Shown here piece by piece: positions 772 through 62,784 of a stretch of 64,000 bases of DNA; the first letter of the stretch is position 1, and each line of letters begins with the position of its first letter. The notes under the pieces were generated by a model. It was given only the letters and a program-made list of their open reading frames with translations, was not told the origin of the DNA and ran no database searches. The position numbers were made by a program, and so were the translations under genes. The stretch is from Ostrea edulis (taxonomy: Eukaryota), in contig NC_079168.1 in the NCBI RefSeq assembly GCF_947568905.1, positions 32,736,001 to 32,800,000 of the forward strand, read 5' to 3'.

Positions 772-2694
772 ATGGCCACATCGAGTGAACGCGAGGAAGA
801 GAACTTCGGATTAAAAGTGTGCTGTATTTGTTTTGAACATTACAAGACTCCGAGATGCTTGCCGTGTTCACACTCGTTCTGTGAGGCCTGTTTATCAGCT
901 CACATCCAGTCGTCATGTTCTGATTGTAATCCTCCACTAGGATTTCCATGTCCCCTCTGTCAAGTTTTCGTCCCGGCACCCGGGAGGTTTGCTCAGTATT
1001 CGTTCAAAGACTGGGCCAGGGTCTTCCCAGAAAATAAATTCCTCGCTTCCATCGCTGTGAATGATGTCAGTTTGACATCCATTCCCTGTCATCCCTGTAA
1101 AGAAGATGGAGAAGATGCGCGGGGAACTAGCTGGTGCGTGGAGTGTTCCGATGTTCTGTGTGATGAGTGTGTTAAGTGTCACCGGAGGTCCCGCCCTTCT
1201 CGTCATCACGAGGTAGTCTCACTCACTAATATATCCGGGACGCTCTCACAGAAGTACCCAGGACTAGAGAACTGTGAGACTCACGGGGGTCGAAAAATTG
1301 AAGTGTTTTGTGAAAATCACCTCGCTCCGTGCTGTTCTCTTTGTGTTATTAAAGAACATGGCGGTTGTTCCAGCCTCTGTCACATAGAGGAAGCTGCCGA
1401 GAAACTCCTAGAAAACGATAATGTCAAGAATTTACAGGATGATGTAGAGAAATTATGTACAGCGATAGAGGGATTAATAAAAGGAGAGAGAGTTAACATC
1501 GATGAGATTGACAATACCTCTGACAGATTTACAAAAGAAATATCAGACACAACAGCGGCAATCATCCAAGCTGTTAAGAATTCAGAAGAAACACATTTGG
1601 ATGAACTTGCAAAATCGTGCAAAGAATCAAAATGCAAACTTGAAAAATCAATTAAATGTTATGAACAAAGACTACAATATCTTCGGTATTCGAAAAAAAT
1701 ATCACAGAGGAATTGTGCAAGTGTAAAAAATCCGAAAATCTGCTCTGTTTTGTCATACAGTAAAATGAGACATATTTATGAAAATTTGAAAAGATTGGAC
1801 TACACACAACTAAAAATATCTGTAAAAACTGAATTACACGACGACGTACAAAAGCTAATTAATTTACCTTGCTTAGCAGCAATCACCACGGCTGAACACC
1901 AAACCCCTGATATGCTATATATTTGGATCAAAGTAAAGAACGCTGAAGTAAAAATAGTTTCTGAATTCAAGGTTGATGGTGCCGACTTGTTCGGTGGAGT
2001 TTTCCTTCAGAATGATCAATTATTACTGGCGGATTCTTCAGGTAATAAATGTGTACTATGCAGCATGGATGGTGTTATTCTGCACATTATATCTACAGAT
2101 GGAAGTCCGTGGGGGGTTTGTGCCATTGGAGAAAATGAAGTTCTTGTTGGACTCGCTGATGACAGAAAAATATTAAAACTATCTCATTCACTTAAAAACT
2201 TACAAACCATACAAGTTGATTGTATGTGTTATGGAATATCGACATTTGGAAATACGATTGCCATAGGAACTCGTGATTCTGTTCAAACATTTGACAGTAA
2301 TTTTCAGAGGGTCAGATACTCAAATGATTTATCTTATACTGATGATGTAGCAGTCGATGATGAGGAAAGCGTCATTTACTCTAGTTACAGTACGTCGACA
2401 GTCAGAAAAGTAGACAGAAAGGGAAACATCTTATTCACTTACAGTCATGAAGAATTAAAAAAGCCATGTGGACTAACAGTAGACAGGGTGGGGAATATAT
2501 ACGTAATTGGCAAATACAGCAACAATGTCCACATATTGTCTAGGAGTGGTGAGGTCGTGAGAATTCTGAACGGAGTGGTGACGAGCCCGGAATGCATTAA
2601 CATCCAGGAGGGTGGAAACAGATTCTTTGTCGGTGAGGCAGGAGGGATAGTGAAAATATTTGAATTCAAATGGAAAAAAGAAATGAATGGTTAA
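772..2694 (+). CDS. TRIM protein (RING-Bbox1-Bbox2-coiled coil-NHL-like propeller), divergent member, intronless CDS
   Basis: 640-aa ATG ORF. C3HC4 RING (CCICFEHY..CSHSFC..C..CPLC), B-box1 (CHPC..CVECSDVLCDEC..H..H), B-box2 (CETH..FCENH..CC..C..H), heptad-rich region, then NHL-like repeats (PWGVC, CYGIS, PCGLTVDRVGNIYV). Confidence 0.93.
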   Translation: MATSSEREEENFGLKVCCICFEHYKTPRCLPCSHSFCEACLSAHIQSSCSDCNPPLGFPCPLCQVFVPAPGRFAQYSFKDWARVFPENKFLASIAVNDVSLTSIPCHPCKEDGEDARGTSWCVECSDVLCDECVKCHRRSRPSRHHEVVSLTNISGTLSQKYPGLENCETHGGRKIEVFCENHLAPCCSLCVIKEHGGCSSLCHIEEAAEKLLENDNVKNLQDDVEKLCTAIEGLIKGERVNIDEIDNTSDRFTKEISDTTAAIIQAVKNSEETHLDELAKSCKESKCKLEKSIKCYEQRLQYLRYSKKISQRNCASVKNPKICSVLSYSKMRHIYENLKRLDYTQLKISVKTELHDDVQKLINLPCLAAITTAEHQTPDMLYIWIKVKNAEVKIVSEFKVDGADLFGGVFLQNDQLLLADSSGNKCVLCSMDGVILHIISTDGSPWGVCAIGENEVLVGLADDRKILKLSHSLKNLQTIQVDCMCYGISTFGNTIAIGTRDSVQTFDSNFQRVRYSNDLSYTDDVAVDDEESVIYSSYSTSTVRKVDRKGNILFTYSHEELKKPCGLTVDRVGNIYVIGKYSNNVHILSRSGEVVRILNGVVTSPECINIQEGGNRFFVGEAGGIVKIFEFKWKKEMNG

Positions 2695-3913
2695 TTGTGA
2701 ACTCACGAGGTGTTGCCATATCCTGTATACCGTGTCCGTTACAGAAAAGTGAATATATATATAGTACTGTCTCTCATTGTGAAGCATTCTTCACCTTTAT
2801 TTCATCTGATATCTGTAAATGATTATCACGCATTAAAAAGATGTTATACAAGATTTTTTTTGTTTGATAAACTTTTGATATACTTGTAAATGTGGGAGGA
2901 TTTGAAGTATTGGGTAGTTATAAATTACCAGATTTTCATTTGTACTCACTTTAATTTTCGTCCCTTTCGGAACTGTTTGTGCCAAGTTTGGTATAAATTG
3001 CCTGATTAGTTCTCGTGATCTAAAATGTGGTAATTTTACGCCAATAATGACAGACAATGTACACGTAAATATCACCTTAGTCATCAGACTGTTTCATTGA
3101 AAGTGTCATCAAATAAAAATTCAGTGCATGCGCGTGTTTTTGGATTATTTGATTTAACCATGTCGATATATTACAGGTGTTTAGATATAACTAAAAGATA
3201 AATTTCAAAAGATTTCAATGAAAAACGCAAAAATAGGAGTTGGTCCAAAATCAGAAGTCTTAAACAGTGCACGTGTATATACGTACATACGTATGCGTCT
3301 CGGCACTATTCGTCATCCTACATCTTAGGTTCTTCTTGTTTGAACATGTTTTACTGTATAGTGCATACAAATGGATTAGATACAAGTGCCTGCAACTTAA
3401 TAATCCTCTCCAATGTACTTGAATACATTGAATATATAAATTAGAAAACTGTCATACAAACGTTTTAGAATTCAACTATATTTTTGAAAATTATATATGC
3501 TAATTCAAAACCTAAAAGAATCTCTAAGGTGGTTTTGTACAGAGGGGGAAATTCTGTTCAAATGCGTCGATTCCCATTGACAAGCAGTGAGTATATTTTG
3601 ATTATAAACCTGCAGGGCATATTTAAATTTCCTATTGTGACACGGTACTGATTATATTACCCATTGTCTATAGTTCTGACCAACTGCACTGAGAACAAAT
3701 ATTTTGGACCGCAAATAAGAAGGTTTTTATACCTGGAGTATGATCATCTAGTAAACGTGAGACAGTAACACAACAATCTTTAAACAGGTTGGGAACACTT
3801 CCCCTATAGCGAGATATTATCGCGAAAACGCGATTATCCCTCTTTAGCGAGAGTAAATATATCCCGTACAACCAAGAAAAACACTCTAGCAGTACACCTC
3901 ATCGTGTTTCATT

Positions 3914-4125
3914 CATCCGTGGCCGAGTGGTTAGAGCATCGCGCTCAAAATCACACGGCCTCTCACCTCTGTCGGCGCGGGTTCGAATCCCGCTCGCGCC
4001 GATAAGTGAGAAAATTTCCCAGTTTACTTTCGGAAGTTCGGTGGTCTCTTCCACCAATAAAAACTGAGCGCCACCAGATAACTGAAAAATTGTTGAGTGT
4101 GGCGGAAAACATTAAATCAATCAAT
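3914..4125 (+). mobile_element. tRNA-derived SINE
   Basis: A box TGGCCGAGTGG, B box GGTTCGAATCC, a body that does not close a tRNA cloverleaf, and an (atca)-like tail. Confidence 0.7.
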
Positions 4126-4145
4126 CTTCGTGTTTCACGTGAAAA

Positions 4146-4308: not shown

Positions 4309-4371
4309 TTTCTTAAATTGTAACTTGAAACAGTTGCAGTAGTTTGGGCTATATAGACCGTGGGCTTCTGT

Positions 4372-7772: not shown

Positions 7773-9638
7773 ATGGCCACTTCCACTTCAAACATCCATT
7801 GTGATTTGACGGTATGTTCTATTTGTTTGGAACATTACAAATCACCAAGGTATTTACTGTGCACACACACTTTCTGTCATCCGTGTCTACTGTCACACAT
7901 CAAGTCGTCGTGTGCGGACTGCAGTCTACCGCTCGGATTTCCATGTCCGCTGTGTAGAACATTCGTCTCCGCGCTTGGTAATGTTGCCCAGTTCACTCCA
8001 GAAGAATGGGCAGGCAGATTTCCAGAAAACCAATTGATGAGTTCCGTTGCAAATCAATGCGAGCCTTGTGACATTGGTGGAGACAACAAACCTGCTAGTG
8101 GTTGGTGCAGAGACTGCTCCGAGGCTTTGTGCGAGGAGTGTCTTCACAGTCACAAAAAATTCAAACGTTCTAGAAATCATGAAATAGTTCCTCTCACTGT
8201 AGGGGCTATTCCTTCTACTTCTACCCCATCACTGGAGATGTGCGAGGATCATGAGGGGCGAAAAATTGAAATGTTTTGTGAAATTCATCTCGCACCATGT
8301 TGTGTCCTCTGTGTTACAACAGAACACGGTAAATGTAAAAGCATTTGTTTGATAGAGGAAGCGACCGATAAAGTAATAAAACCTGGGAAAGTAAAACGCT
8401 TGCGAGATGATGTCGATCGACTTGAAGTCATGTTAGAAAAGGTTATTACTGAAGAGAAAGCCAACATCAAAGAAGTTGAAGATGTAGCCGAGAAGTTAGG
8501 AAACGAAATTTCGGGAGCAAAAGCAGCCATTATTGAAACTGTAACAAAGCTGGAGGAACAACATTTAAACGAAGTAGGAAAAGCAACCAAAGATGCTAAA
8601 GCAAAGCTTCAAAAATCAATCAACACTTTCGAACAGAGGCACTGTTATCTTCGCCATTGGAAAGAAATACTCGGGAAAAATCTATTCACTGATGGGTCAC
8701 CAAAAACAATTGTCGCATTGTCTTATACCAAAATGGAACGAATATTTCAAACTTTGAGAAAAATGGAAATGTCTCGGCTCAAAATTCGAATTCAAGCCAA
8801 GATACAAGATGACGTTAAGAAATTGATGAAGTTACCTTTGCTTGCAGAAATTACCACGAATGAACACAAAAGTCCTGTAATGCTAGATGAAATTGATATA
8901 GAAAATGCTGAAATCAAAAAGATTTCTGAATTTACAATTGATGGTGCTGATTTCAGAGGAGGGGTTTATCTCCAGAATGGGGAATTAGTACTGGCTGATT
9001 ATTCTAAGAGCAGACTCATTCACTGTAGAACAGATGGGGAGATTCTGAGAGAGGTGCCTCTACAAGGTTCTCCATGGGACATTTGTGTCAACGAAGAAAA
9101 TGATATTTATGCAACACTTCCTGCAGAAAAGAAAATTTTAGTTATAAGTATTGATACATTCAACACAACAAAAACTGTTGAAGTTGATATGGAGTGCTAT
9201 GGAATATCGCAGTCAGGCAACACTATTGCAATAGGTGGTTTAACTGTTCTAGAAGTATTAAGCGCGGATTTTCAAAAATGTAGTCGTTCAAGTGATGTAG
9301 AAAAATTGTACGATGTAGCAGTAGATATGGCGGAAAATATCATTAATTCGAGTTACACCAGACACAAAGTCTGGAAACAAGACAGAGGGGGAAATGTCTT
9401 GTTTACATACAGTGATGCAGAATTACAACGTCCATATGGATTAACAGTGGACAGGGTTGGAAATCTATATGTGAATGGTAACCTCAGCAACAATATACAC
9501 ATACTCTCACAGACCGGTAAAAAGTTAAGAATTCTGAATGACGTGAAGAAGCCACAGTGTATTAAATTCCAGAAGACGTACAGATTCTTTGTCGGTGAGG
9601 CAGGGGGACGGGTGAAAATATTTGAATTTATTGCATGA
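7773..9638 (+). CDS. TRIM (RING-Bbox-Bbox-CC-NHL-like), array member
   Basis: 621-aa ATG ORF with complete RING (CSIC..CTHTFC..C..CPLC), both B-boxes, coiled coil and propeller repeats. Confidence 0.93.
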   Translation: MATSTSNIHCDLTVCSICLEHYKSPRYLLCTHTFCHPCLLSHIKSSCADCSLPLGFPCPLCRTFVSALGNVAQFTPEEWAGRFPENQLMSSVANQCEPCDIGGDNKPASGWCRDCSEALCEECLHSHKKFKRSRNHEIVPLTVGAIPSTSTPSLEMCEDHEGRKIEMFCEIHLAPCCVLCVTTEHGKCKSICLIEEATDKVIKPGKVKRLRDDVDRLEVMLEKVITEEKANIKEVEDVAEKLGNEISGAKAAIIETVTKLEEQHLNEVGKATKDAKAKLQKSINTFEQRHCYLRHWKEILGKNLFTDGSPKTIVALSYTKMERIFQTLRKMEMSRLKIRIQAKIQDDVKKLMKLPLLAEITTNEHKSPVMLDEIDIENAEIKKISEFTIDGADFRGGVYLQNGELVLADYSKSRLIHCRTDGEILREVPLQGSPWDICVNEENDIYATLPAEKKILVISIDTFNTTKTVEVDMECYGISQSGNTIAIGGLTVLEVLSADFQKCSRSSDVEKLYDVAVDMAENIINSSYTRHKVWKQDRGGNVLFTYSDAELQRPYGLTVDRVGNLYVNGNLSNNIHILSQTGKKLRILNDVKKPQCIKFQKTYRFFVGEAGGRVKIFEFIA

Positions 9639-12237: not shown

Positions 12238-12255
12238 TCTTCCTCTGTACAAAGA

Positions 12256-12435
12256 ACCAACCATAGCAGTAACATGTACTGATCAACCAACCATAGCAGT
12301 AACACGTACTGATCAACCAACCATAGCAGTAACATGTACTGATCAACCAACCATAGCAGTAACATGTACTGATCAACTAACCATAGCAGTAACATGTACT
12401 GATCAACCAACCATAGCAGTAACATTTACTGATCA
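12256..12435. repeat. 30-bp minisatellite (aaccaaccatagcagtaacatgtactgatc), ~6 copies
   Basis: Direct tandem repeats with no spacers. Confidence 0.95.
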
Positions 12436-12779
12436 AGAAAACAATTTGTTGAAATATTCATTACTTTATTACTGTGTTGTGCTGCTTGCACAGAATTTTA
12501 AAAAAAATTCACAAATTAAATTAAACCAAAAAAAACAGCCTGATTGACAGAGACCTACATTTCATACTTGAAGAAAAACAAATTACTCTATTAACAAACA
12601 AATTACTACATCTTCAATAGATGGTAAGCTTATAATGATAATTTATGAGCCCTTACTTTCATATTTCAATTAATTGCATCATAGGGCCACATTCTAGAAC
12701 AAAATAAGAAGTGCACATGCAGGCACACAGCCAGGAGTATATGGATTTCCCATAATGGTTGTCATTTTTGGAAATGTTA

Positions 12780-19220: not shown

Positions 19221-19748
19221 ATGGCCACTGTCACTTCAAACACCCATTCTGATATGACGGTATGTTCTATTTGTTTGGAACGTTACAAATCACCAAGGTA
19301 TTTACTGTGCACACACACTTTCTGTCATCCGTGTCTACTGTCACACATCAAGTCGTCGTGTGCGCACTGCAGTCTACCGCTCGGATTTCCATGTCCACTG
19401 TGTAGAACGTTCGTCTTCGCGCCTGGTAATGTTGGCCAGTTCACTCCAGAAGAATGGGCTGACAGATTTCCAGAAAACCGATTTATGAGTTCCGTTACAA
19501 ATAAATGCGAGCCTTGTAACATTGATGGAGACGACAAACCTGCTAGTGGTTGGTGCAGAGACTGCTCCGAGGCTTTGTGCGAGGAGTGTCTTCAGTGGCA
19601 CAAAAAATTCAAACGTTCTAGAAATCATGAAATAGTTCCTTTCACTGAAGGCGCTATTCCTTCTACTTCTACCTCCTCACTAGACATGTGCGAGGATCAC
19701 GAGGGGCGAAAAATTGAAATGTTTTGTCACTTCAAACATCCATTGTGA
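19221..19748 (+). pseudogene. Truncated TRIM ORF (RING, B-box1, partial B-box2), 5' part of a frameshifted chimeric locus
   Basis: 175 aa; follows the 60916-type sequence to ...IEMFC, then reads out of frame HFKHPL* after the junction at 19727/19728. Confidence 0.85.
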
Positions 19749-21588
19749 TTTGACAGTCTGTTCTATTTATTTGGAACATTACAAATCACCAAGGTATTTA
19801 CCGTGCACACACACTTTCTGTCATCCGTGTCTACTGTCACACATCAAGTCGTCGTGTGCGGACTGCAGTCTACCGCTCGGATTTTCATGTCCGCTGTGTC
19901 GAACGTTCGTCTCCGCGCCTGGTAATGTTGGCCAGTTCACTCCAGAAGAATGGGCAGGCAGATTTCCAGAAAACCGATTTATGAGCTCTGTTGCAAATCA
20001 ATGCGAGCCTTGTGACATTGATGGAGACGACAAACCTGCTAGTGGTTGGTGCAGAGACTGCTCCGAGGCCTTGTGCGAGGAGTGTCTTCAGTGGCACAAA
20101 AAATTCAAACCTTCTAGAAATCATGAAATAGTTCCTCTCACTGAAGGGGCTATTCCTTCTACTTCTACCCCATTACTGGACATGTGCGAGGATCATGAGG
20201 GGCGAAAAATTGAAATGTTTTGTGAAAGTCATCTCGCACCATGTTGTGTCCTCTGTGTTACAACAGAACACGGTAAATGTAAAAGCATTTGTTCGATAGA
20301 GGAAGCGACCGATAAAGTAATAAAACCTGGGAAAGTAAAACGCTTGCGAGATGATGTCGATCGACTTGAAGTCATGTTAGAAAAGGTTATTACTGAAGAG
20401 AGAGCCAACATCCAAGAAATCGAAGATGTAGCCGACAAGTTAGGGGAAGAAATTTCGGGAGCGAAAGCAGCCATTATTGAAACTGTAACAAAGCTGGAAG
20501 AACAACATTTAAACGAAGTAGGAAAAGCAACCAAAGATGCTAAAGCAAAGCTTCAAAAATCAATCAACAATTTCGAACAGAGGCAATGTTATCTTCGCCA
20601 TTGGAAAGAAATATTCGGGAAAAATTTATTGACTGATGGGTCACTAAAAACAATTGTCGCATTGTCTTATACCAAAATGGAACGAATATTTCAAACTTTG
20701 AGAGAAATGGAAATGTCTCAGCTCAGATTTGGAATTCAAGCCAAGATACAAGATGACGTTAAGAAATTGATGAAGTTACCTTTGCTTGCAGAAATTACCA
20801 CAAATGAACAAAAAAGCCCTGTAATGCTAGATGAAATTGATATAGAAAATGCTGAAATCAACGTGATTTCTGAATTTACGATTGATGGTGCTAGTTTTAC
20901 AGGAGGGGTTTATCTCCAGAATGGGGAATTAGTACTGGCTGATAATATAAACAAGAAACTCGTTCACTGTAGAACAGATGGGGAGATTCTGAGAAAGATG
21001 CCTCTGCGAGGTTCTCCTTGGGATATTTGTGTCAACGAAGAAAATGATATTTATGTAACACTTCCAAAAAAAAAAGAAAAAGTTTTGGTTATTAGTATTG
21101 ATACATTCAACACAACAAAAACTGTTGAAGTTGATATTGAGTGCCGTGGAATAACACAGTCAGGCAACACTATTGCATTAGGTTCTATAAATGTTCTAGA
21201 AGTATTAAGTGCGGGTTTTCGAAAATGTAGGAGTTCAAGCGATGTAAAAGGATTGTACGATGTAGCAGTAGATATGGAAGAAAATATCATTTATTCGAGT
21301 TACTCCAAACACAAAGTCTGGAAACAGGACAGAGAAGGAAATGTCTTGTTCACATACAGTGATACAGAATTACAACATCCATACGGATTAACAGTGGACA
21401 GGATTGGGAATATATATTTGAATGGTAACAGCAGCAACAATATACACATACTCTCACAGACCGGTAAAAAGTTAAGAATTCTGAATGACGTGAGGGAGCC
21501 ACAATGTATTAAATTCCAGGAGAACACGCACAGATTCTTTGTCGGTGAGGCAGGGGGACGGGTGAAAATATTTGAATTTATTGCATGA
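19714..21588 (+). pseudogene. Downstream TRIM reading frame with no natural start (RING C->Y; first in-frame ATG at 19981 would give a RING-less protein)
   Basis: The track start at 19714 is TTG. Sequence resumes at nt 12 of a 34910-type CDS (CSIY, LGFS, PLLDM) and continues as 60916-type (ERAN, NNFEQ, ASFTGG, DNINKK). Confidence 0.8.
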
Positions 21589-23606: not shown

Positions 23607-23714
23607 ACTCTCTTTCTGGAATTTATTTTGCAATCGTGAGTCCAACTTTTCAGTCAGTACCAATATATTAATTTCCCTGTTCAAATGAATTGTGAAGTCA
23701 CTTAACTGGAGTTA

Positions 23715-24000
23715 AATCACTGAATAACTACCAGTCACAATGGTTCAGTAACTGTAGATAAATCACTGAGTAACTACAGTCACAATGGTTCAGTAACTGT
23801 AGATAAATCACTGAGTCACTACCAGTCACAATGGTTCAGTAACTGTAGATAAATCACTGAGTCACTACCAGTCACAATGGTTCAGTAACAGTACATAAAT
23901 CACTGAGTAACTACAGTCACAATGGTTCAGTAACTGTAGATAAATCACTGAGTCACTACCAGTCACAATGGTTCAGTAACTGTAGATAAATCACTGAGTG
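23715..24000. repeat. ~46-bp minisatellite (aaatcactgagtcactaccagtcacaatggttcagtaactgtagat), ~6 copies
   Basis: Direct tandem repeats; ~3 copies at 49545-49685 and a single unit in other repeats. Confidence 0.9.
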
Positions 24001-34909: not shown

Positions 34910-36775
34910 ATGGCCACTGTCACTTCAAACATCCATTGTGATTTGACAGTCTGTTCTATTTATTTGGAACATTACAAATCACCAAGGTATTTACCGTGCA
35001 CACACACTTTCTGTCATCCGTGTCTACTGTCACACATCAAGTCGTCGTGTGCGGACTGCAGTCTACCGCTCGGATTTTCATGTCCGCTGTGTCGAACGTT
35101 CGTCTCCGCGCCTGGTAATGTTGGCCAGTTCACTCCAGAAGAATGGGCAGGCAGATTTCCAGAAAACCGATTTATGAGCTCTGTTGCAAATCAATGCGAG
35201 CCTTGTGACATTGATGGAGACGACAAACCTGCTAGTGGTTGGTGCAGAGACTGCTCCGAGGCCTTGTGCGAGGAGTGTCTTCAGTGGCACAAAAAATTCA
35301 AACCTTCTAGAAATCATGAAATAGTTCCTCTCACTGAAGGGGCTATTCCTTCTACTTCTACCCCATTACTGGACATGTGCGAGGATCATGAGGGGCGAAA
35401 AATTGAAATGTTTTGTGAAAGTCATCTCGCACCATGTTGTGTCCTCTGTGTTACAACAGAACACGGTAAATGTAAAAGCATTTGTTCGATAGAGGAAGCG
35501 ACCGATAAAGTAATAAAACCTGGGAAAGTAAAACGCTTGCGAGATGATGTCGATCGACTTGAAGTCATGTTAGAAAAGGTTATTACTGAAGAGAAAGCCA
35601 ACATCCAAGATATCGAAGATGTAGCTGACAAGTTAGGGGAAGAAATTTCGGGAGCGAAAGCAGCCATTATTGAAACTGTAACAAAGCTGGAGGAACAACA
35701 TTTAAACGAAGTAGGAAAGGCAACTAAAGATGCTAAAGCAAAACTTCAAAAATCAATCAACACTTTCGAACAGAGGCAATGTTATCTTCGCCACTGGAAA
35801 GAAATACTCGGGAAAAATTTATTCACTGATGGGTCATCAAAAACAATTGTCGCATTGTCTTATACCAAAATGGAACGTATATTTCAAACTTTGAAAGAAA
35901 TGGAAATGTCTCAGCTCAGATTTGGAATTCAAGCCAAGATACAAGATGACGGTAAGAAATTGATGAAGTTACCTTTCCTTGCAGATATTACCACGAATGA
36001 ACACAAAAGCCCTGTAATGCTAGATGAAATTGATATAGAAAATGCTGAAATCAAAGCGATTTCTGAATTTACGATTGATGGTGCTGATTTTACAGGAGGG
36101 GTTTATCTCCAGAATGGGGAATTAGTACTGGCCGATAATAAAAACAAGAGACTTATTCACTGTAAAACAGATGGGGAGATTCTGAGAGAGGTGTCTCTGC
36201 AAGGTTCTCCATGGGACATTTGTGTCAACGAAGAAAATGATATTTATGTAACAATTCCTAAAGAAAAGAAAATTTTAGTAATTAGTATTGATACATTCAA
36301 CACAACAAAAACTGTTGAAGTTGATATTAAGTGCCATGGAATAGCACAGTCAGGCGACACTATAGCAATAGCTGGTTTAACTATTCTAGATATATTAAGC
36401 ACGGATTTTCGAAAATGTAGGAGTTTAAGGAATTTACAAGGTATGTACGATGTAGCAGTAGATATGGGGGAAAATATCATTTATTCGAGTGACACCACAC
36501 ACAATGTATGGAAACAAGACAGAGAAGGAAATGCCTTGTTCACATACAGAGATACAGAATTACAATATCCATATGGATTAACAGTGGACAGGGTTGGAAA
36601 TGTATATGTGAATGGTAACCTCAGCAACAATATACACATACTCTCACAGACTGGTAAAAAGTTAAGAATTCTTAATGACGTGAAGAAGCCACAGTGTATT
36701 AAATTCCAGAAGACGTACAGATTCTTTGTTGGTGAGGCAGGGGGACGGGTGAAAATATTTGAATTTGTTGTATGA
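34910..36775 (+). CDS. TRIM array member with RING Zn-ligand substitution (CSIY)
   Basis: 621-aa intact ATG ORF with all domains; second RING Cys is Tyr (TAT). Confidence 0.88.
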   Translation: MATVTSNIHCDLTVCSIYLEHYKSPRYLPCTHTFCHPCLLSHIKSSCADCSLPLGFSCPLCRTFVSAPGNVGQFTPEEWAGRFPENRFMSSVANQCEPCDIDGDDKPASGWCRDCSEALCEECLQWHKKFKPSRNHEIVPLTEGAIPSTSTPLLDMCEDHEGRKIEMFCESHLAPCCVLCVTTEHGKCKSICSIEEATDKVIKPGKVKRLRDDVDRLEVMLEKVITEEKANIQDIEDVADKLGEEISGAKAAIIETVTKLEEQHLNEVGKATKDAKAKLQKSINTFEQRQCYLRHWKEILGKNLFTDGSSKTIVALSYTKMERIFQTLKEMEMSQLRFGIQAKIQDDGKKLMKLPFLADITTNEHKSPVMLDEIDIENAEIKAISEFTIDGADFTGGVYLQNGELVLADNKNKRLIHCKTDGEILREVSLQGSPWDICVNEENDIYVTIPKEKKILVISIDTFNTTKTVEVDIKCHGIAQSGDTIAIAGLTILDILSTDFRKCRSLRNLQGMYDVAVDMGENIIYSSDTTHNVWKQDREGNALFTYRDTELQYPYGLTVDRVGNVYVNGNLSNNIHILSQTGKKLRILNDVKKPQCIKFQKTYRFFVGEAGGRVKIFEFVV

Positions 36776-38174: not shown

Positions 38175-38476
38175 GAACCAACCATAGTAGTAACATGTAC
38201 TGATCAACCAACCATAGCAGTGACATTTACTGATCAACCAACCATAGCAGTAACATGTACTGATCAACCAACCATAGCAGTAACATGTACTGATCAACCA
38301 ACCATAGCAGTAACATGTACTGATCAACCAACCATAGCAGTAACATGTACTGATCAACCAACCATAGAAGTAACATGTACTGATCAACCAACCATAGCAG
38401 TAACATGTACTGATCAACCAACCATAGCAGTAACATGTACTGATCAACCAACCATAGCAGTAACATGTACTGATCA
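38175..38476. repeat. 30-bp minisatellite, ~10 copies
   Basis: Same unit as at 12256. Confidence 0.95.
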
Positions 38477-38633
38477 AGAAAACAATTTGTTGAAATATTC
38501 ATTACTTTATTACTGTGTTGTGCTGCTTGCACAGAATTTTTTAAAAAAATCACAAATTAAATTAAACCAAAAAACAGCCTGATTGACAGAGACCTACATT
38601 TCATACTTGAAGAAAAACAAATTACTCTATTAA

Positions 38634-45578: not shown

Positions 45579-47447
45579 ATGGCCACTGTCACTTCAAACA
45601 CCTATTGTGATATGACGGTATGTTCTATTTGTTTGGAACGGTACAAATCACCAAGGTATTTACCGTGCACACACACTTTCTGTCATCCGTGTCTACTGTC
45701 ACACATCAAGTCGTCGTGTACGGACTGCAGTCTACCGCTCGGATTTCCATGTCCACTGTGTAGAACGTTCGTCTCCGCGCCTGGTAATGTTGGCCAGTTC
45801 ACTCCAGAAGAATGGGCAGACAGATTTCCAGAAAACCGATTTATGAGTTCCGTTACAAATAAATACGAGCCTTGTGACATTGATGGAGACAACAAACCTG
45901 CTAGTGGTTGGTGCAGGGACTGCTCGGAGGCTTTGTGCGAGGAGTGTCTTCAGTGGCACAAAAAATTCAAACCTTCTAGAAATCATGAAATAGTTCCTCT
46001 CACTGAAGGGGCTATTCCTTCTACTTCTACCTCCTCACTGGACATGTGCGAGGATCACGAGGGGCGAAAAATTGAAATGTTTTGTGAAAGTCATCTCGCA
46101 CCATGTTGTGTCCTCTGTGTTACAACAGAACACGGTAAATGTAAAAGCATTTGTTTGATAGAGGAAGCGACCGATAAAGTAATAAAACCTGGGAAAGTAA
46201 AACTCTTGCGAGATGATGTCGATCGACTTGAAGTCATGTTAGAAAAGGTTATTACTGCAGAGAAAGCCAACATCCAAGAAATCGAAGATGTAGCCGACAA
46301 GTTACGGGAAGAAATTTCGGGAGCGAAAGCAGCCATTATTGAAACTGTAACAAAGCTGGAGGAACAACATTTAAACGAAGTAGGAAAAGCAACCAAAGAT
46401 GCTAAAGCAAAACTTCAAAAATCAATCAACACTTTCGAACAGAGGCAATGTTATCTTCGCCATTGGAAAGAAATACTCGGGAAAAATTTATTCACTGATG
46501 GGTCACCAAAAACAATTGTCGCATTGTCTTATACCAAAATGGAACGAATATTTCAAACTTTGAGAGAAATGGAAATGTCTCAGCTCAGATTTGGAATTCA
46601 AGCCAAGATACAAGATGACGTTAAGAAATTGATGAAGTTACCTTTGCTTGCAGAAATTACCACAAATGAACACAAAAGCCCTGTAATGCTAGATGAAATT
46701 GATATAGAAAATGCTGAAATCAACGCGATTTCTGAATTTACGATTGATGGTGCTAATTTTACAGGAGGGGTTTATCTCCAGAATGGGGAATTAGTACTGG
46801 CTGATCATAAAAACAAGAGACTCGTTCACTGTAGAACAGATGGGGAGATTCTGAGAAAGATGCCTCTGCAAGGTGCTCCATGGGATATTTGTGTCAACGA
46901 AGAAAATGATATTTATGTAACACTTTCTAGAGGAAAGAAAATTTTAGTTATTAGTATTGATGCATTCAACACGACAAAAACTGTTGAAGTTGATATTGAG
47001 TGCCGTGGAATAGCACAGTCAGGCAACACTATTGCAGTAGGTTGTATAAATGTTCTAGACGTATTAAGTGCGGATTTTCGAAAATGTAGGAGTTCAAGCG
47101 ATGTAAAAGGATTGTACGATGTAGCAGTAGATATGGAGGAAAATATCATTTATTCGAGTTACACCAAACACAAAGTCTGGAAACAGGACAGAGAAGGAAA
47201 TGTCTTGTTCACATACAGTGATACAGAATTACAACATCCATATGGATTAACAGTGAACAGGATTGGGAATATATATGTGAATGGTAAAGGCAGCAACAAT
47301 ATACACATACTCTCACAGACCGGTAAAAAGTTAAGAATTCTGAATGACGTGAGGGAGCCACAATGTATTAAATTCCAGGAGAACACGCACAGATTCTTTG
47401 TCGGTGAGGCACGGGGACGGGTGAAAATATTTGAATTTATTGCATGA
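45579..47447 (+). CDS. TRIM array member (B-box1 first Cys->Tyr)
   Basis: 622-aa ATG ORF; RING intact; NKYEPC instead of NKCEPC. Confidence 0.92.
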   Translation: MATVTSNTYCDMTVCSICLERYKSPRYLPCTHTFCHPCLLSHIKSSCTDCSLPLGFPCPLCRTFVSAPGNVGQFTPEEWADRFPENRFMSSVTNKYEPCDIDGDNKPASGWCRDCSEALCEECLQWHKKFKPSRNHEIVPLTEGAIPSTSTSSLDMCEDHEGRKIEMFCESHLAPCCVLCVTTEHGKCKSICLIEEATDKVIKPGKVKLLRDDVDRLEVMLEKVITAEKANIQEIEDVADKLREEISGAKAAIIETVTKLEEQHLNEVGKATKDAKAKLQKSINTFEQRQCYLRHWKEILGKNLFTDGSPKTIVALSYTKMERIFQTLREMEMSQLRFGIQAKIQDDVKKLMKLPLLAEITTNEHKSPVMLDEIDIENAEINAISEFTIDGANFTGGVYLQNGELVLADHKNKRLVHCRTDGEILRKMPLQGAPWDICVNEENDIYVTLSRGKKILVISIDAFNTTKTVEVDIECRGIAQSGNTIAVGCINVLDVLSADFRKCRSSSDVKGLYDVAVDMEENIIYSSYTKHKVWKQDREGNVLFTYSDTELQHPYGLTVNRIGNIYVNGKGSNNIHILSQTGKKLRILNDVREPQCIKFQENTHRFFVGEARGRVKIFEFIA

Positions 47448-53157: not shown

Positions 53158-55038
53158 ATGATTTACGACGTTATGGCCACTGTCACTTCAAACATCCATT
53201 GTGATTTGACGGTATGTTCTATTTGTTTGGAACATTACAAATCACCAAGGTATTTACCGTGCACACACACTTTCTGTCATCCGTGTCTACTGTCACACAT
53301 CAAGTCGTCGTGTGCGGACTGCAGTCTACCGCTCGGATTTCCATGCCCGCTGTGTAGAACATTCGTCTCCGCGCCTGGTAATGTTGGCCAGTTCACTCCA
53401 GAAGAATGGGCAGACAGATTTCCAGAAAACCAATTCATGAGTTCCGTTGCAAATCAATGCGAGCCTTGTGACATTGGTGGAGACAACAAACCTGCTAGTG
53501 GTTGGTGCAGAGACTGCTCGGAGGCTTTGTGCGAGGAGTGTCTTCAGTGGCACAAAAAATTCAAACGTTCCAGAAATCATGAAATAGTTCCTCTCACTGA
53601 AGGGGCTATTCCTTCTACTTCTACCCCATCACTGGACATGTGCGAGGATCACGAGGGGCGAAAAATTGAAATGTTTTGTGAAAGTCATCTCGCACCATGT
53701 TGTGTCCTCTGTGTTACAACAGAACATGGTAGATGTAAAAGCATTTGTTCGATAGAGGAAGCGACCGATAAAGTAATAAAACCTGGGAAAGTAAAACGCT
53801 TGCGAGATGATGTCGATCGACTTGAAGTCATGTTAGAAAAGGTTATTACTGCAGAGAAAGCCAACATCCAAGAAATTGAAGATGTAGCTAACAAGTTAGG
53901 AGAAGAAATTTCGAGAGCAAAAGCAGCCATTATTGAAACTGTAACAAAGCTGGAGGAACAACATTTAAACGAAGTAGGAAAAGCAACCAAAGATGCTAAA
54001 GCAAAACTTCAAAAATCAATCAACACTTTCGAACAGAGGGAATGTTATCTTCGCCATTGGAAAGAAATACTCGGGAAAAATTTATTCACTGATGGGTCAC
54101 CAAAAACAATTGTCGCATTGTCTTATACCAAAATGGAACGAATATTTCAAACTTTGAGAGAAATGGAAATGTCTCAGCTCAGATTTGGAATTCAAGCCAA
54201 GATACAAGATGACGTTAAGAAATTGATGAAGTTACCTTTGCTTGCAGAAATTACCACAAATGAACACAAAAGCCCTGTAATGCTAGATGAAATTGATATA
54301 GAAAATGCTGAAATCAACGCGATTTCTGAATTTACGATTGATGGTGCTAATTTTACAGGAGGGGTTTATCTCCAGAATGGGGAATTAGTACTGGCTGATC
54401 ATAAAAACAAGAGACTCGTTCACTGTAGAACAGATGGGGAGATTCTGAGAAAGATACCTCTGAAAGGTTCTCCATGGGATATTTGTGTCAACGAAGAAAA
54501 TGATATGTATGTAACACTTCCTAAAAAAAAGAAAGTTTTAGTTATTAGTATTGATACATTCAACACAACAAAAACTGTTGAAGTTGATATTGAGTGCCGT
54601 GGAATAGCACAGTCAGGCAACACTATTGCATTAGGTTGTATAAATGTTCTAGAAGTATTAAGTGCGGATTTTCGAAAATGTAGTTCAAGCGATGTAACAG
54701 GATTGTACGATGTAGCAGTAGATATGGAGGAAAATATCATTTATTCGAGTTACACCAAACATAAAGTCTGGAAACAGGACAGAGAAGGAAATGTCTTGTT
54801 CACATACAGAGATACAGAATTACAATATCCATATGGATTAACAGTGGACAGGGTTGGAAATATATATGTGAATGGTAAAAGCAGCAACAATATACACATA
54901 CTCTCACAGACTGGTAAAAAGTTAAGAATTCTGAATGACGTGAGGGAGCCACAGTGTATTAAATTCCAGGAGAACACGCACAGATTCTTTGTTGGTGAGG
55001 CAGGGGAACGGGTGAAAATATTTGAATTTGTTGTATGA
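53158..55038 (+). CDS. TRIM array member (start at 53158 or at the paralog-equivalent ATG 53173)
   Basis: 626-aa ORF with all Zn ligands intact and a 3-nt deletion in the propeller (CSSSDV). Confidence 0.92.
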   Translation: MIYDVMATVTSNIHCDLTVCSICLEHYKSPRYLPCTHTFCHPCLLSHIKSSCADCSLPLGFPCPLCRTFVSAPGNVGQFTPEEWADRFPENQFMSSVANQCEPCDIGGDNKPASGWCRDCSEALCEECLQWHKKFKRSRNHEIVPLTEGAIPSTSTPSLDMCEDHEGRKIEMFCESHLAPCCVLCVTTEHGRCKSICSIEEATDKVIKPGKVKRLRDDVDRLEVMLEKVITAEKANIQEIEDVANKLGEEISRAKAAIIETVTKLEEQHLNEVGKATKDAKAKLQKSINTFEQRECYLRHWKEILGKNLFTDGSPKTIVALSYTKMERIFQTLREMEMSQLRFGIQAKIQDDVKKLMKLPLLAEITTNEHKSPVMLDEIDIENAEINAISEFTIDGANFTGGVYLQNGELVLADHKNKRLVHCRTDGEILRKIPLKGSPWDICVNEENDMYVTLPKKKKVLVISIDTFNTTKTVEVDIECRGIAQSGNTIALGCINVLEVLSADFRKCSSSDVTGLYDVAVDMEENIIYSSYTKHKVWKQDREGNVLFTYRDTELQYPYGLTVDRVGNIYVNGKSSNNIHILSQTGKKLRILNDVREPQCIKFQENTHRFFVGEAGERVKIFEFVV

Positions 55039-56479: not shown

Positions 56480-56810
56480 AACCAACCATAGCAGTGACAT
56501 TTACTGATCAACCAACCATAGCAGTGACATTTACTGATCAACCAACCATAGCAGTAATGTGTACTGATCAACCAACCATAGCAGTGACATTTACTGATCA
56601 ACCAACCATAGCAGTGACATTTACTGATCAACCAACCATAGCAGTAACATGTACTGATCAACCAACCATAGCAGTAACATTTACTGATCAACCAACCATA
56701 GCAGTGACATTTACTGATCAACCAACCATAGCAGTAACATGTACCGATCAACCAACCATAGCAGTAACATTTACTGATCAACCAACCATAGCAGTGACAT
56801 TTACTGATCA
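56480..56810. repeat. 30-bp minisatellite, ~11 copies
   Basis: Same unit as at 12256, with g/a and t/g variants. Confidence 0.95.
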
Positions 56811-57679
56811 AGAAAACAATTTGTTGAAATATTCATTACTTTCTTACTGTGTTGTGCTGCTTGCACAGAATTTTGAAAAATTTCACAAATTAAATTAAAC
56901 CAAAAAACAGCCTGATTGACAGAGACCTACATTTCACACTTGAAGAAAAACAAATTACTCTATTAACAAACAAATTACTACATCTACAATAGATGGTAAG
57001 CTTATAATGATAATTTATGAGCCCTTACTTTCATATTTCAATTAATTGCATCATAGGGCCACATTCTAGAACAAAATAAGAAGTGTACATGCAGGCACAC
57101 AGCCTGGAGTATATTCAGAGGGGTGAGTGAATCCTTTGGATTTCCCATAATGGTTGTCATTTTTGGAAATGTTAAAGGATTTGATCCCTAACTATATGAA
57201 ATAAGAGCTCTGATTGTGGGTAAAAATAAATACCCCAATATCATAACTACTAAAGATAAATAAAAATAATTAATTTTCCAATAATTTTTATTGGATAGCA
57301 TTAAACAATTTTTAATGCAGTGTGTGAATGCACCCCTCTGCTTAAAAGGGTTTGTGCTATTCTCTCTCTCTCTCTCTTGCACTCTCTTTCTGAATGTTTT
57401 TCCAATCGGAGTCTAATTTTTCAGTCTCACAGTACCAATATATTAAACTCCCCATCCAAATGAATCGTGAAGTCACTTAACTGCAGATGATCGAGTGAGT
57501 GACTACCAGTCACAATGGTTCAGTGTAATTATTGATATTGCTCAGCGCTTCAACTCAAACGAAGTCACTTACAATCTATACAGTTTAAATACAGTTACTG
57601 ACAAAAATAAGTCTAAATGACGATGATAAAGTATGACAAAAATTATTAACTATAAAACGATAATCTATATGACGATGAA

Positions 57680-60915: not shown

Positions 60916-62784
60916 ATGGCCACTGTCACTTCAAACACCCATTCTGATATGACGGTATGTTCTATTTGTTTGGAACGTTACAAATCACCAAGGTATTTAC
61001 CGTGCACACACACTTTCTGTCATCCGTGTCTACTGTCACACATCAAGTCGTCGTGTGCGCACTGCAGTCTACCACTCGGATTTCCATGTCCACTGTGTAG
61101 AACGTTCGTCTCCGCGCCTGGTAATGTTGGCCAGTTCACTTCAGAAGAATGGGCTGACAGATTTCCAGAAAACCGATTTATGAGTTCCGTTACAAATAAA
61201 TGCGAGCCTTGTAACATTGATGGAGACGACAAACCTGCTAGTGGTTGGTGCAGAGACTGCTCCGAGGCTTTGTGCGAGGAGTGTCTTCAGTGGCACAAAA
61301 AATTCAAACCTTCTAGAAATCATGAAATAGTTCCTTTCACTGAAGGGGCTATTCCTTCTACTTCTACCTCCTCACTGGACATGTGCGAGGATCACGAGGG
61401 GCGAAAAATTGAAATGTTTTGTGAAAGTCATCTCGCACCATGTTGTGTCCTCTGTGTTACAACAGAACACGGTAAATGTAAAAGCATTTGTTCGATAGAG
61501 GAAGCGACCGATAAAGTAATAAAACCTGGGAAAGTAAAACGCTTGCGAGATGATGTCGATCGACTTGAAGTCATGTTAGAAAAGGTTATTACTGAAGAGA
61601 GAGCCAACATCCAAGAAATCGAAGATGTAGCCGACAAGTTAGGGGAAGAAATTTCGGGAGCGAAAGCAGCCATTATTGAAACTGTAACAAAGCTGGAAGA
61701 ACAACATTTAAACGAAGTAGGAAAAGCAACCAAAGATGCTAAAGCAAAGCTTCAAAAATCAATCAACAATTTCGAACAGAGGCAATGTTATCTTCGCCAT
61801 TGGAAAGAAATATTCGGGAAAAATTTATTGACTGATGGGTCACTAAAAACAATTGTCGCATTGTCTTATACCAAAATGGAACGAATATTTCAAACTTTGA
61901 GAGAAATGGAAATGTCTCAGCTCAGATTTGGAATTCAAGCCAAGATACAAGATGACGTTAAGAAATTGATGAAGTTACCTTTGCTTGCAGAAATTACCAC
62001 AAATGAACACAAAAGCCCTGTAATGCTAGATGAAATTGATATAGAAAATGCTGAAATCAACGTGATTTCTGAATTTACGATTGATGGTGCTAGTTTTACA
62101 GGAGGGGTTTATCTCCAGAATGGGGAATTAGTACTGGCTGATAATATAAACAAGAAACTCGTTCACTGTAGAACAGATGGGGAGATTCTGAGAAAGATGC
62201 CTCTGCGAGGTTCTCCATGGGATATTTGTGTCAACGAAGAAAATGATATTTATGTAACACTTCCAAAAAAAAAGAAAGTTTTAGTTATTAGTATTGATAC
62301 ATTCAACACAACAAAAACTGTTGAAGTTGATATTGAGTGCCGTGGAATAGCACAGTCAGGCAACACTATTGCATTAGGTTCTATAAATGTTCTAGAAGTA
62401 TTAAGTGCGGATTTTCGAAAATGTAGGAGTTCAAGCGATGTAAAAGGATTGTACGATGTAGCAGTAGATATGGAAGAAAATATCATTTATTCGAGTTACT
62501 CCAAACACAAAGTCTGGAAACAGGACAGAGAAGGAAATGTCTTGTTCACGTACAGTGATACAGAATTACAACATCCATATGGATTAACAGTGGACAGGAT
62601 TGGGAATATATATTTGAATGGTAACAGCAGCAACAATATACACATACTCTCACAGACCGGTAAAAAGTTAAGAATTCTGAATGACGTGAGGGAGCCACAA
62701 TGTATTAAATTCCAGGAGAACACGCACAGATTCTTTGTCGGTGAGGCAGGGGGACGGGTGAAAATATTTGAATTTATTGCATGA
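60916..62784 (+). CDS. TRIM array member
   Basis: 622-aa intact ATG ORF with all domains. Confidence 0.93.
   Translation: MATVTSNTHSDMTVCSICLERYKSPRYLPCTHTFCHPCLLSHIKSSCAHCSLPLGFPCPLCRTFVSAPGNVGQFTSEEWADRFPENRFMSSVTNKCEPCNIDGDDKPASGWCRDCSEALCEECLQWHKKFKPSRNHEIVPFTEGAIPSTSTSSLDMCEDHEGRKIEMFCESHLAPCCVLCVTTEHGKCKSICSIEEATDKVIKPGKVKRLRDDVDRLEVMLEKVITEERANIQEIEDVADKLGEEISGAKAAIIETVTKLEEQHLNEVGKATKDAKAKLQKSINNFEQRQCYLRHWKEIFGKNLLTDGSLKTIVALSYTKMERIFQTLREMEMSQLRFGIQAKIQDDVKKLMKLPLLAEITTNEHKSPVMLDEIDIENAEINVISEFTIDGASFTGGVYLQNGELVLADNINKKLVHCRTDGEILRKMPLRGSPWDICVNEENDIYVTLPKKKKVLVISIDTFNTTKTVEVDIECRGIAQSGNTIALGSINVLEVLSADFRKCRSSSDVKGLYDVAVDMEENIIYSSYSKHKVWKQDREGNVLFTYSDTELQHPYGLTVDRIGNIYLNGNSSNNIHILSQTGKKLRILNDVREPQCIKFQENTHRFFVGEAGGRVKIFEFIA

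What the first reader, a model, noticed from the sequence alone, without database searches (positions are those of the whole stretch)
772..62784. TRIM-NHL-like paralog array with variation concentrated in recurring propeller loop positions
Seen: among the six close paralogs the B-boxes and coiled coil are nearly invariant, while equivalent spots in successive propeller blades differ radically. Examples: LAD[YSKS/NINK/NKNK/HKNK], L[Q/R/K]G[S/A]PW, T[LPAE/LPKK/IPKE/LSRG]K, C[Y/R/H]GI, [IGGL/LGSI/IAGL/VGCI/LGCI], SS[YTR/YSK/DTT/YTK]H, LQ[R/H/Y]PYG, NG[NL/NS/KG/KS]SN, V[KK/RE]PQ. Known: in NHL domains (Brat, LIN-41/TRIM71, TRIM56) such loops form the ligand- or RNA-binding top face, and lineage-specific TRIM expansions such as fish finTRIMs show diversifying selection on the C-terminal sensor domain. 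Inference: a diversified innate-immune sensor/E3 repertoire, with charge changes suggesting nucleic-acid or viral ligands.
Basis: partly seen in the sequence, partly recalled or inferred. Interest (0 to 1): 0.7.

Follow-up and report, generated by a model that had tools for sequence, protein, structure and literature searches.

The report
Oyster TRIM-NHL array with hypervariable top face
An oyster chromosome carries seven tandem, intronless RING/B-box/coiled-coil/NHL-propeller genes whose recent copies differ mainly in the loops on the ligand-binding face of the propeller, at a rate about twice neutral; this looks like a diversifying recognition repertoire, but an immune role is untested.

Summary
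The window (oyster chromosome OX387708.1, assembly GCA_947568905.1) has seven + strand intronless RING-Bbox1-Bbox2-coiled-coil-NHL ORFs: six close copies (86-97% aa identity) and one at 49%.

These loops form the top surface that binds RNA in Brat.

- **Concentration:** nonsynonymous changes fall in these 58 codons more than in any of 237 circular shifts of the labels; synonymous changes do not.
- **Rates:** omega is 2.3 for top loops (95% CI about 1.5-3.6) against 0.58 for the rest of the propeller and about 0.5 for the RBCC.
- **Test:** omega_top=1 is rejected (LRT 9.5-20, p 0.002 to 6e-6). This holds across trees, three-taxon subsets and codon-frequency models, and exceeds a parametric bootstrap.
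- **Limits:** the signal is lost if all multi-nucleotide codon columns are removed. There are only six sequences, and they show gene conversion.

"RBCC nearly invariant" is overstated: 17% of columns vary. One copy is disrupted, two carry a RING Cys-to-Tyr change and one a B-box1 Cys-to-Tyr change. The top-loop net charge is about neutral, so the nucleic-acid inference is unsupported. The scan noted a similar RING-less array elsewhere in this genome.

The parts
772..2694 (+). Copy Z: divergent RING-Bbox-CC-NHL paralogue (640 aa, 49% identical to the others)
   Evidence: ORF; weak Pfam RING and B-box hits; aligned in A1
7773..9638 (+). Copy A: intact 621-aa RBCC-NHL gene; propeller encoded at about 8913-9635; most divergent propeller of the six
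   Evidence: All zinc ligands present. Private changes are N21:S3 in the RBCC and N12:S2 in the top loops
19221..19748 (+). Copy B, 5' fragment: ATG-initiated RING-Bbox1 ORF (175 aa) that ends in a stop at the duplication junction
   Evidence: Sequence read; 496-nt tandem duplication 19229-20223; Pfam RING and B-box hits
19714..21588 (+). Copy B, main ORF: no ATG at its start and RING C18Y. Its 5' part (nt 88 to about 560) is identical to C and the rest nearly identical to F. Probably a disrupted or chimeric gene
34910..36775 (+). Copy C: 621-aa ORF with RING C18Y; shared upstream homology starts only about 46 bp before the ATG; divergent propeller (about 36050-36772)
45579..47447 (+). Copy D: 622-aa ORF used as the structural reference; B-box1 first Cys replaced (C96Y); propeller residues 381-620 = nt 46719-47438
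   Evidence: AF2 model with propeller pLDDT above 90. NHL fold matches TRIM2, Thin, Brat, TRIM3, Mei-P26 and Lin41. Pfam RING 29 bits, B-box 36 bits, NHL 25 bits
53158..55038 (+). Copy E: intact ORF (626 aa from 53158; the family-type start MATVTS is at 53173); propeller about 54313-55035
60916..62784 (+). Copy F: intact 622-aa ORF, last of the array; propeller about 62056-62781; 98.6% identical in DNA to B over 3 kb

Best explanation
This is a young tandem array of intronless RING-Bbox1-Bbox2-coiled-coil-NHL (TRIM-NHL-like, no filamin domain) genes in an oyster. It evolves by duplication, unequal crossing-over and gene conversion.

The conserved N-terminal RBCC would be the shared dimerising E3/effector module. 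The six-bladed NHL propeller would be the recognition module.

Amino-acid replacements accumulate about twice as fast as synonymous changes in the B-C and D-A loops that build the top (ligand-binding) face. The strands, the bottom loops and the RBCC stay below the neutral rate. So the paralogues are being pushed apart in what they bind: diversifying selection on target specificity, with gene exchange reshuffling loop variants between copies.

Shown here: the architecture, the fold, the location of the variation, the rate heterogeneity, omega_top>1 under standard models, recombination, and lesions in three copies.

Inferred: that the top face binds the ligand (by analogy with Brat, LIN-41 and TRIM2/3), that the ligands are pathogen-derived, and that the intact copies (A, E, F) are active E3 ligases.
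For: **Architecture and fold**
- Pfam RING, B-box and marginal NHL hits.
- AF2 gives a long helix at 204-303 and a six-bladed propeller at 381-620 with pLDDT above 90.
- The best Foldseek hits are NHL domains of TRIM2, Thin, Brat, TRIM3, Mei-P26 and Lin41, with TM 0.75-0.78 on the target.

**Location of the variation**
- All nine reader examples, and 34/58 top-loop columns, vary.
- Circular shift: 0 of 237 shifts reach the observed value for N changes; there is no enrichment for S changes.
- 'Top' is defined as the b-c and d-a loops, and this surface is the RNA-binding platform of Brat (PMC4015489).

**Rates**
- Tree-free pN/pS: top 1.93, bottom 0.77, strands 0.41, RBCC 0.56.
- pN_top/pS_NHL is 1.73, p=0.009; with events collapsed it is 1.56, p=0.03.
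- ML fixed partition: omega_top 2.3 against 0.58, LRT 13.6, p=2e-4. Alternative trees give LRT 11.7. Recombination-proof triplets give 9.5-12.3. Four codon-frequency models give 11.9-20.4. The profile CI is about 1.5-3.6.
- Parametric bootstrap under omega_top=1: maximum LRT 6.7 and maximum omega 1.61 in 70 replicates.
- M1a against M2a: propeller p=0.0012; RBCC not significant.

**Selection for function**
- All coding indels are in frame, and strands stay constrained.

**Same ranking in relatives**
- M. gigas tandem triplet: 1.2-1.5 (top) against 0.3-0.7 for the other classes.
- C. virginica: 0.7 against 0.25-0.30.
- Outgroup L002: 0.7-0.9 against about 0.2-0.3.
- Column entropy in distant oyster homologues: top 1.70, bottom 1.24, strands 1.12 bits.

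**Gene exchange**
- Mosaic nearest neighbours; PHI-like test p=0.0005 for the CDS and p=0.025 for the NHL.
Against: - There are only six sequences from one assembly, and they have recombined.
- If every column with a multi-nucleotide codon difference is removed, omega_top falls to 1.33 and is not significant. Multi-nucleotide or micro-conversion events could therefore inflate omega. The A-specific loop 410-413 has 7 changes in 12 nt.
- omega is raised in all classes within the array (RBCC 0.5 against 0.2-0.3 in deeper comparisons). This shows general relaxation in young duplicates.
- omega_top is not significantly above 1 in M. gigas and is below 1 in deeper comparisons.
- Three of the six copies carry lesions: B is disrupted, B and C have RING C18Y, and D has B-box1 C96Y.
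- The top-loop net charge is about 0, not positive.
- There is no expression, ligand or immune evidence for these genes.
Confidence: 0.6

Rival explanations
1. Birth-and-death decay plus mutational artefact. The copies are redundant young duplicates under relaxed constraint, and some are already dying. The top loops are simply the least constrained residues (omega approaching 1). The apparent excess over 1 comes from multi-nucleotide mutations or short conversion tracts being counted as several independent replacements on very short branches.
For: - omega is raised everywhere in the array (RBCC about 0.5-0.6) against 0.2-0.3 in deeper comparisons.
- Lesions are present in B, C and D.
- Private changes in A's RBCC are N21:S3.
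- The LRT is lost when multi-nucleotide codon columns are dropped.
- omega_top declines with divergence: 2.3, then 1.2-1.5, then 0.7-0.9.
- There is a clustered 7-in-12-nt change in loop 410-413 of A.
Against: - Relaxation alone cannot exceed 1, and the CI is about 1.5-3.6.
- The signal survives removal of the two densest clusters (LRT 6.6, p=0.01) and collapsing each codon to one event (ratio 1.56, p=0.03).
- 12 of 58 top-loop sites have three or more states among six sequences, many with non-conservative replacements. Only 6 of 180 other propeller sites do, and most of those are conservative swaps such as I/L/V.
- Strands stay constrained and all indels are in frame.
- The RBCC control shows no M2a signal despite stronger recombination.
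Confidence: 0.25
2. Diversification is real but not immune. The paralogues partition endogenous targets (mRNAs or proteins, as for Brat, LIN-41 and TRIM2/3) or police transposable elements, and the top face tracks those targets.
For: - Canonical TRIM-NHL proteins are post-transcriptional regulators that use the top face (PMC4015489).
- The array sits among LINE reverse-transcriptase ORFs.
- No immune evidence was obtained for these genes.
Against: - Endogenous targets rarely drive omega>1 among very recent tandem copies.
- The top face is not electropositive.
- There is no filamin domain, and the family is oyster-specific and fast-turning-over.
- In C. gigas the TRIM multigene family is prominent among OsHV-1/POMS resistance-associated genes, which favours a defence context.
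Confidence: 0.12
3. Assembly artefact: some 'paralogues' are uncollapsed haplotypes placed in tandem, so part of the variation is allelic.
For: B and F are 98.6% identical over about 3 kb, and 97% identical over a further 3.8 kb upstream. This is within the range of oyster heterozygosity (my own knowledge).
Against: - B has its own 496-nt duplication and a C-like 5' end.
- The other copies differ by 4-10% and have different flanks and TE insertions.
- The key signal comes from A, C and the D/E/F group, not from the B-F pair. Triplet tests exclude B.
Confidence: 0.03

Closest known systems
Fish finTRIM and primate TRIM5alpha
   Same: RBCC effector module with a variable C-terminal recognition domain; tandem lineage-specific copies; replacements focused in surface loops of one face with omega>1; gene exchange between copies.
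   Different: The sensor here is a six-bladed NHL beta-propeller, not B30.2. The host is a mollusc. No viral target, induction or restriction has been shown. Several copies have lost zinc ligands.
Canonical TRIM-NHL proteins: Brat, Mei-P26, LIN-41/TRIM71, TRIM2, TRIM3, TRIM32, Thin
   Same: RING/B-box/coiled-coil plus NHL propeller. These NHL domains are the best structural matches. The variable loops correspond to the top surface used for RNA binding in Brat.
   Different: Only about 17-20% sequence identity in the propeller. No filamin/Ig domain between the coiled coil and the NHL. The top-loop net charge is about neutral rather than positive. The canonical proteins are single-copy, slowly evolving developmental regulators, whereas these are a fast-evolving tandem family.
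Oyster TRIM multigene family (annotated TRIM45/56/71/Midline-1-like in Magallana gigas, Crassostrea virginica and Saccostrea)
   Same: Direct homologues at 41-53% identity with the same length and architecture. They also lie in tandem arrays. In C. gigas the TRIM family is associated with POMS/OsHV-1 resistance.
   Different: No paper in the searched library describes concentration of the variation, or omega>1, on the NHL top-face loops. This particular close cluster appears confined to this locus of this genome.

Membership tests
TRIM/RBCC proteins | N-terminal C3HC4 RING with all eight zinc ligands | tested here: met
   Met in A, D, E, F and in the B 5' fragment (Pfam zf-C3HC4 24.5-29 bits against a cutoff of 21). 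Not met in the B main ORF or in C, where the second ligand is replaced (C18Y). C18 is nearly invariant in 25 homologues.
TRIM/RBCC proteins | One or two B-boxes followed by a coiled coil | tested here: met
   Pfam zf-B_box 30-36 bits against a cutoff of 24.1, with two stretches in C, D, E and F. AF2 predicts a continuous helix at 204-303, at low pLDDT as expected for a monomer model of a dimeric coil. D lacks the first B-box1 Cys (C96Y).
TRIM-NHL subfamily (class VII: TRIM2/3/32/71, Brat, Mei-P26) | C-terminal six-bladed NHL beta-propeller | tested here: met
   AF2 gives six four-stranded blades with pLDDT above 90. The top Foldseek hits are TRIM2, Thin, Brat, TRIM3, Mei-P26 and Lin41 NHL domains, E 1e-18 to 1e-14. 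The Pfam NHL repeat is marginal at 19.6-27.3 bits against a cutoff of 20.
TRIM-NHL subfamily (class VII) | Filamin/Ig domain between the coiled coil and the NHL (present in TRIM2/3/71, absent in TRIM32) | tested here: not met
   No Pfam filamin hit. Residues 304-380 are short helices and coil at low pLDDT.
TRIM-NHL subfamily (class VII) | Electropositive RNA-binding top surface | tested here: inconclusive
   The net charge of the 58 top-loop residues is -4 to +1, and that of the bottom loops is -6 to -9. This is a crude count without coordinates.
Diversifying TRIM sensor repertoires (finTRIM/TRIM5-like) | Lineage-specific tandem expansion | tested here: met
   Seven copies in 62 kb on one strand. 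The closest relatives outside the array are at most 71% identical (L002) and 53% (Saccostrea). There are parallel arrays in M. gigas and C. virginica.
Diversifying TRIM sensor repertoires (finTRIM/TRIM5-like) | Positive selection focused on ligand-binding loops of the C-terminal domain | tested here: met
   omega_top is 2.3 (CI about 1.5-3.6). LRT p ranges from 2e-4 to 0.01 across variants, and the observed value exceeds the bootstrap. Caveat: the result is not robust to removing all multi-nucleotide codon columns.
Diversifying TRIM sensor repertoires (finTRIM/TRIM5-like) | B30.2/PRY-SPRY sensor domain | tested here: not met
   No SPRY or PRY hit. The C-terminal domain is an NHL propeller.
Diversifying TRIM sensor repertoires (finTRIM/TRIM5-like) | Induction by virus or interferon-like signalling, or direct restriction activity | not testable with these tools
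Only family-level literature from C. gigas is available.

The most novel reading that the evidence does not exclude
Oysters use NHL-propeller TRIMs as a TRIM5/finTRIM-like germline repertoire of pathogen-recognition E3 ligases. Specificity is written in the top-face loops and is reshuffled between tandem copies by gene conversion. RING-dead members (C18Y) act as decoys or regulators. This would be an invertebrate restriction-factor system that converged on the vertebrate logic with a different sensor fold.
Probability: 0.3. Interest if true: 0.75.

Novelty: new variant of a known kind. Interest (0 to 1): 0.55.

Why it matters
Bivalves lack adaptive immunity, and they suffer mass mortalities from viruses and protozoan parasites. 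Their genomes hold large TRIM families whose roles are almost entirely unknown.

Suppose the specificity-determining surface of one such family is the NHL top face, and that it is under diversifying selection. That would give concrete residues to test for ligand binding. It would also give a rationale for reading copy-number and loop variation at such arrays as candidate resistance loci. Finally, it would be a second, independent sensor fold for the 'conserved RBCC plus fast-evolving sensor' design known from vertebrate TRIM5 and finTRIM.

If the signal is instead only relaxed constraint, the locus is an ordinary birth-and-death gene cluster.

Tried and rejected
- **Frameshift-compensation** as the cause of multi-residue loop differences: rejected. 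The codon alignment shows point substitutions and only in-frame indels.
- **Locally higher mutation or ancestry depth in the loops:** rejected. Synonymous changes are not enriched in top loops (pS 0.195 against 0.217 for the whole propeller).
- **Tree misspecification by recombination:** addressed with alternative topologies and three-taxon subsets, and with an RBCC control that shows no M2a signal.
- **Codon-frequency model dependence:** four models give the same result.
- **LRT miscalibration of my own GY94 code:** the parametric bootstrap gives a 7% type I rate at 3.84 and a maximum of 6.7.
- **NEB site posteriors from M2a:** uninformative. Every variable site gets a posterior above 0.99 at this low divergence, so no site list is claimed.
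- **Extending the family within the genome by protein word search:** found only the window's own copies, then at most 71% identity. The array ends after F.
- **Literature searches** for oyster or bivalve TRIM-NHL positive selection: nothing specific found.
- **Model coordinates:** not available to scripts. The face assignment therefore rests on strand order, not on computed solvent exposure.

Full report
**What is there**

The window has no N. It carries nine ORFs of 200 aa or more, all on the + strand. Seven of them are 621-640-aa proteins with a RING, two B-boxes, a long helix and a C-terminal propeller. Two are LINE-type reverse transcriptases at 28910-30709 and 39083-40579.

Copy F is an exact match to a gene on OX387708.1 of assembly GCA_947568905.1. 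From memory I take this assembly to be Ostrea edulis. The closest named homologues are oyster proteins annotated TRIM45/56/71/Midline-1-like, at 41-53% identity.

The six close copies are:
- A, 7773-9638
- B, 19714-21588
- C, 34910-36775
- D, 45579-47447
- E, 53158/53173-55038
- F, 60916-62784

They are 86-97% identical in protein. Copy Z (772-2694) is 49% identical. The array ends after F: no further copy lies in the next 10 kb, where a Sec1-family gene is called on the other strand. The duplication unit includes more than 1 kb of upstream and about 1 kb of downstream DNA at 88-98% identity.

**State of the copies**

A, E and F have every conserved zinc ligand.

B is disrupted. A 496-nt tandem duplication (19229-20223, 94% identity) leaves an ATG-initiated RING-Bbox1 ORF (19221-19748) that runs into a stop at the junction. 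It is followed by a main ORF that has no ATG.

B and C carry Tyr in place of the second RING cysteine (C18Y). D carries Tyr in place of the first B-box1 cysteine (C96Y). Both positions are nearly invariant among 25 homologues. C shares upstream homology with the others only from about 46 bp before its ATG.

**Structure**

I made an AlphaFold2 model of copy D from a 25-sequence alignment. It has pLDDT above 90 over residues 381-620. It shows six four-stranded blades. The N-terminal strand (381-388) closes the last blade.

Foldseek ranks the NHL domains of TRIM2, Thin, Brat, TRIM3, Mei-P26 and Lin41 first, with target TM 0.75-0.78. There is no filamin domain.

I took strand a of each blade to be the strand after the P-x-G motif, as in the Pfam NHL repeat match at 433-448.

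Loedige et al. define exactly these loops as the top surface of an NHL propeller. They show that it is the RNA-binding platform of Brat (PMC4015489).

The face assignment is therefore topological: alternate loops of an antiparallel meander lie on opposite faces. It is supported by the D-A loops being the longest.

**Is the concentration real?**

Yes.
- Variable amino-acid columns: 64/383 in the RBCC against 71/237 in the propeller (p=1e-4).
- Columns with three or more states: 4 against 17.
- Within the propeller: 34/58 top-loop columns vary, against 12/47 bottom-loop and 25/133 strand columns (p=1e-7).
- Rotating the class labels around the domain: none of 237 shifts puts as many nonsynonymous changes (52.2 of 96.2) into 'top'. 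The 6.8 synonymous changes there are unremarkable.

'Nearly invariant RBCC' is an overstatement, because 17% of RBCC columns vary.

**Selection**

Pairwise NG86 values are dN 0.02-0.055 and dS 0.03-0.09 in the RBCC, against dN up to 0.10 and dS up to 0.145 in the propeller. Part of the contrast is therefore deeper ancestry of the propeller.

The copies are mosaics. Nucleotides 88 to about 560 of B are identical to C, and the rest is nearly identical to F. D follows F and then E. A PHI-type test gives p=0.0005 for the CDS and p=0.025 for the propeller.

I therefore used three approaches.

1. **Tree-free minimum-change counts.** pN/pS is 1.93 in top loops, 0.77 in bottom loops, 0.41 in strands and 0.56 in the RBCC. 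Against the pooled synonymous rate of the propeller, pN_top is 1.73-fold higher (p=0.009). It is 1.94-fold higher for loop cores. It is 1.56-fold higher when each codon change is counted once (p=0.03).

2. **A GY94 fixed-partition likelihood of my own.**

| Analysis | Result |
|---|---|
| Six taxa, best tree | omega_top 2.3, rest 0.58, LRT against omega_top=1 = 13.6 (p=2e-4) |
| Two alternative trees | LRT 11.7 |
| Three-taxon sets (A, C plus D, E or F), which have only one topology | LRT 9.5-12.3 |
| Four codon-frequency models | LRT 11.9-20.4 |
| Profile interval | omega_top about 1.5-3.6 |
| Parametric bootstrap under omega_top=1 (70 replicates) | maximum LRT 6.7, maximum omega 1.61 |

3. 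**Site-class models.** M1a against M2a gives p=0.0012 in the propeller. It gives p=0.02-0.05 in the triplets. The RBCC control shows nothing despite its stronger recombination.

The differences are point substitutions, not compensated frameshifts. All coding indels are in frame.

**Limits of the selection claim**

- Dropping loop 410-413 leaves LRT 9.1. In A this loop has seven changes in 12 nt.
- Also dropping 505-512 leaves LRT 6.6 (p=0.01).
- Dropping every column with a multi-nucleotide codon difference leaves omega_top at 1.33, not significant. That is a harsh filter. It does show that multi-nucleotide or micro-conversion events could inflate the estimate.
- omega is raised in all classes inside the array (RBCC about 0.5) compared with deeper comparisons.

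| Comparison | omega_top | Other classes |
|---|---|---|
| Outgroup L002 (a 71%-identical full-length gene on a JGI contig) | 0.7-0.9 | 0.2-0.3 |
| Three tandem M. gigas paralogues | 1.2-1.5 (not significant) | 0.3-0.7 |
| Four C. virginica copies | 0.7 | 0.25-0.30 |

The ranking, with top loops three- to five-fold faster than everything else, is therefore general in this oyster family. Column entropy in distant homologues also shows it. A rate above neutral is demonstrated only for the young array in this window.

**Function**

Top loops have net charge -4 to +1 and bottom loops -6 to -9. The positive top surface described for RNA-binding NHL domains is not evident on this crude measure.

An immune role is plausible but indirect. 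In C. gigas the TRIM multigene family makes up about a third of the differentially expressed multigene-family genes that distinguish POMS-resistant oysters. TRIM genes are also among the OsHV-1 selection outliers (PMC6971885, PMC9437489).

**Verdict**

My preferred reading (about 0.6) is a young, recombining tandem family in which the ligand-binding face of the NHL propeller is under diversifying selection while the RBCC module is kept. Some members are decaying or RING-dead.

The main rival (about 0.25) is relaxed constraint plus multi-nucleotide mutational artefact.

The design parallels finTRIM and TRIM5 but uses a different sensor fold. I found no description of this in the searched literature. 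I therefore rate it a new variant of a known kind. A first-stage note (s1-279243, untested here) reports a similar RING-less TRIM-NHL array elsewhere in this genome.

Noticed in passing
window 19221-20223: A 496-nt tandem duplication of the 5' end of copy B creates a 175-aa RING-Bbox1 ORF that stops at the junction. It leaves the main ORF without an ATG. The two halves have different paralogue affinities: the upstream half is F/D-like, and the downstream half is identical to C for about 470 nt.
   Followed up: partly
window 7825 (A-type numbering C18) in copies B and C; residue 96 of copy D (about 45864): Otherwise near-invariant zinc ligands are replaced by Tyr: RING C18Y in B and C (shared through a recent conversion tract) and B-box1 C96Y in D. 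These may be RING-dead or misfolding variants, or early pseudogenisation.
   Followed up: partly
window 28910-30709 and 39083-40579: Two + strand ORFs carry Pfam RVT_1 reverse-transcriptase domains (E 2e-30). They are LINE-like elements inserted between array members. They were listed with TTG starts, so they are probably 5'-truncated or degraded.
   Followed up: no
window 12255-12436, 38176-38477, 56480-56811: The same 30-bp minisatellite (6-11 copies, 94-97% matches) lies downstream of copies A, C and E. It is part of one version of the duplication unit. Other tandem arrays lie at 23703-23999 (46 bp), 24923-25665 (142 bp) and 27111-27758 (25 bp).
   Followed up: no
L001 6765-21869 (window about 57680 onward, minus strand): A Sec1-family gene model on the opposite strand spans copy F. 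The last array member may therefore sit inside an intron of, or overlap, a neighbouring gene model.
   Followed up: no
L005 4319-6240 (Crassostrea virginica CM130319.1): In the homologous C. virginica array (at least 190 kb, 23.27-23.46 Mb), one copy is split into two abutting ORFs of 308 and 331 aa. This suggests a frameshifted pseudogene, consistent with birth-and-death turnover.
   Followed up: no
L002 235-2118 (JGI metagenome contig Ga0438279_0016420): A 3-kb contig in a JGI metagenome carries a full-length 627-aa member of this family, about 70% identical. It is presumably oyster DNA in an environmental sample. It was used here as the outgroup.
   Followed up: partly
window 7773-9638 (copy A, RBCC part): Private changes in copy A's RBCC are 21 nonsynonymous to 3 synonymous. 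The effector half of this otherwise intact copy therefore evolves at or above the neutral rate, while its propeller strands stay constrained (6:5).
   Followed up: partly
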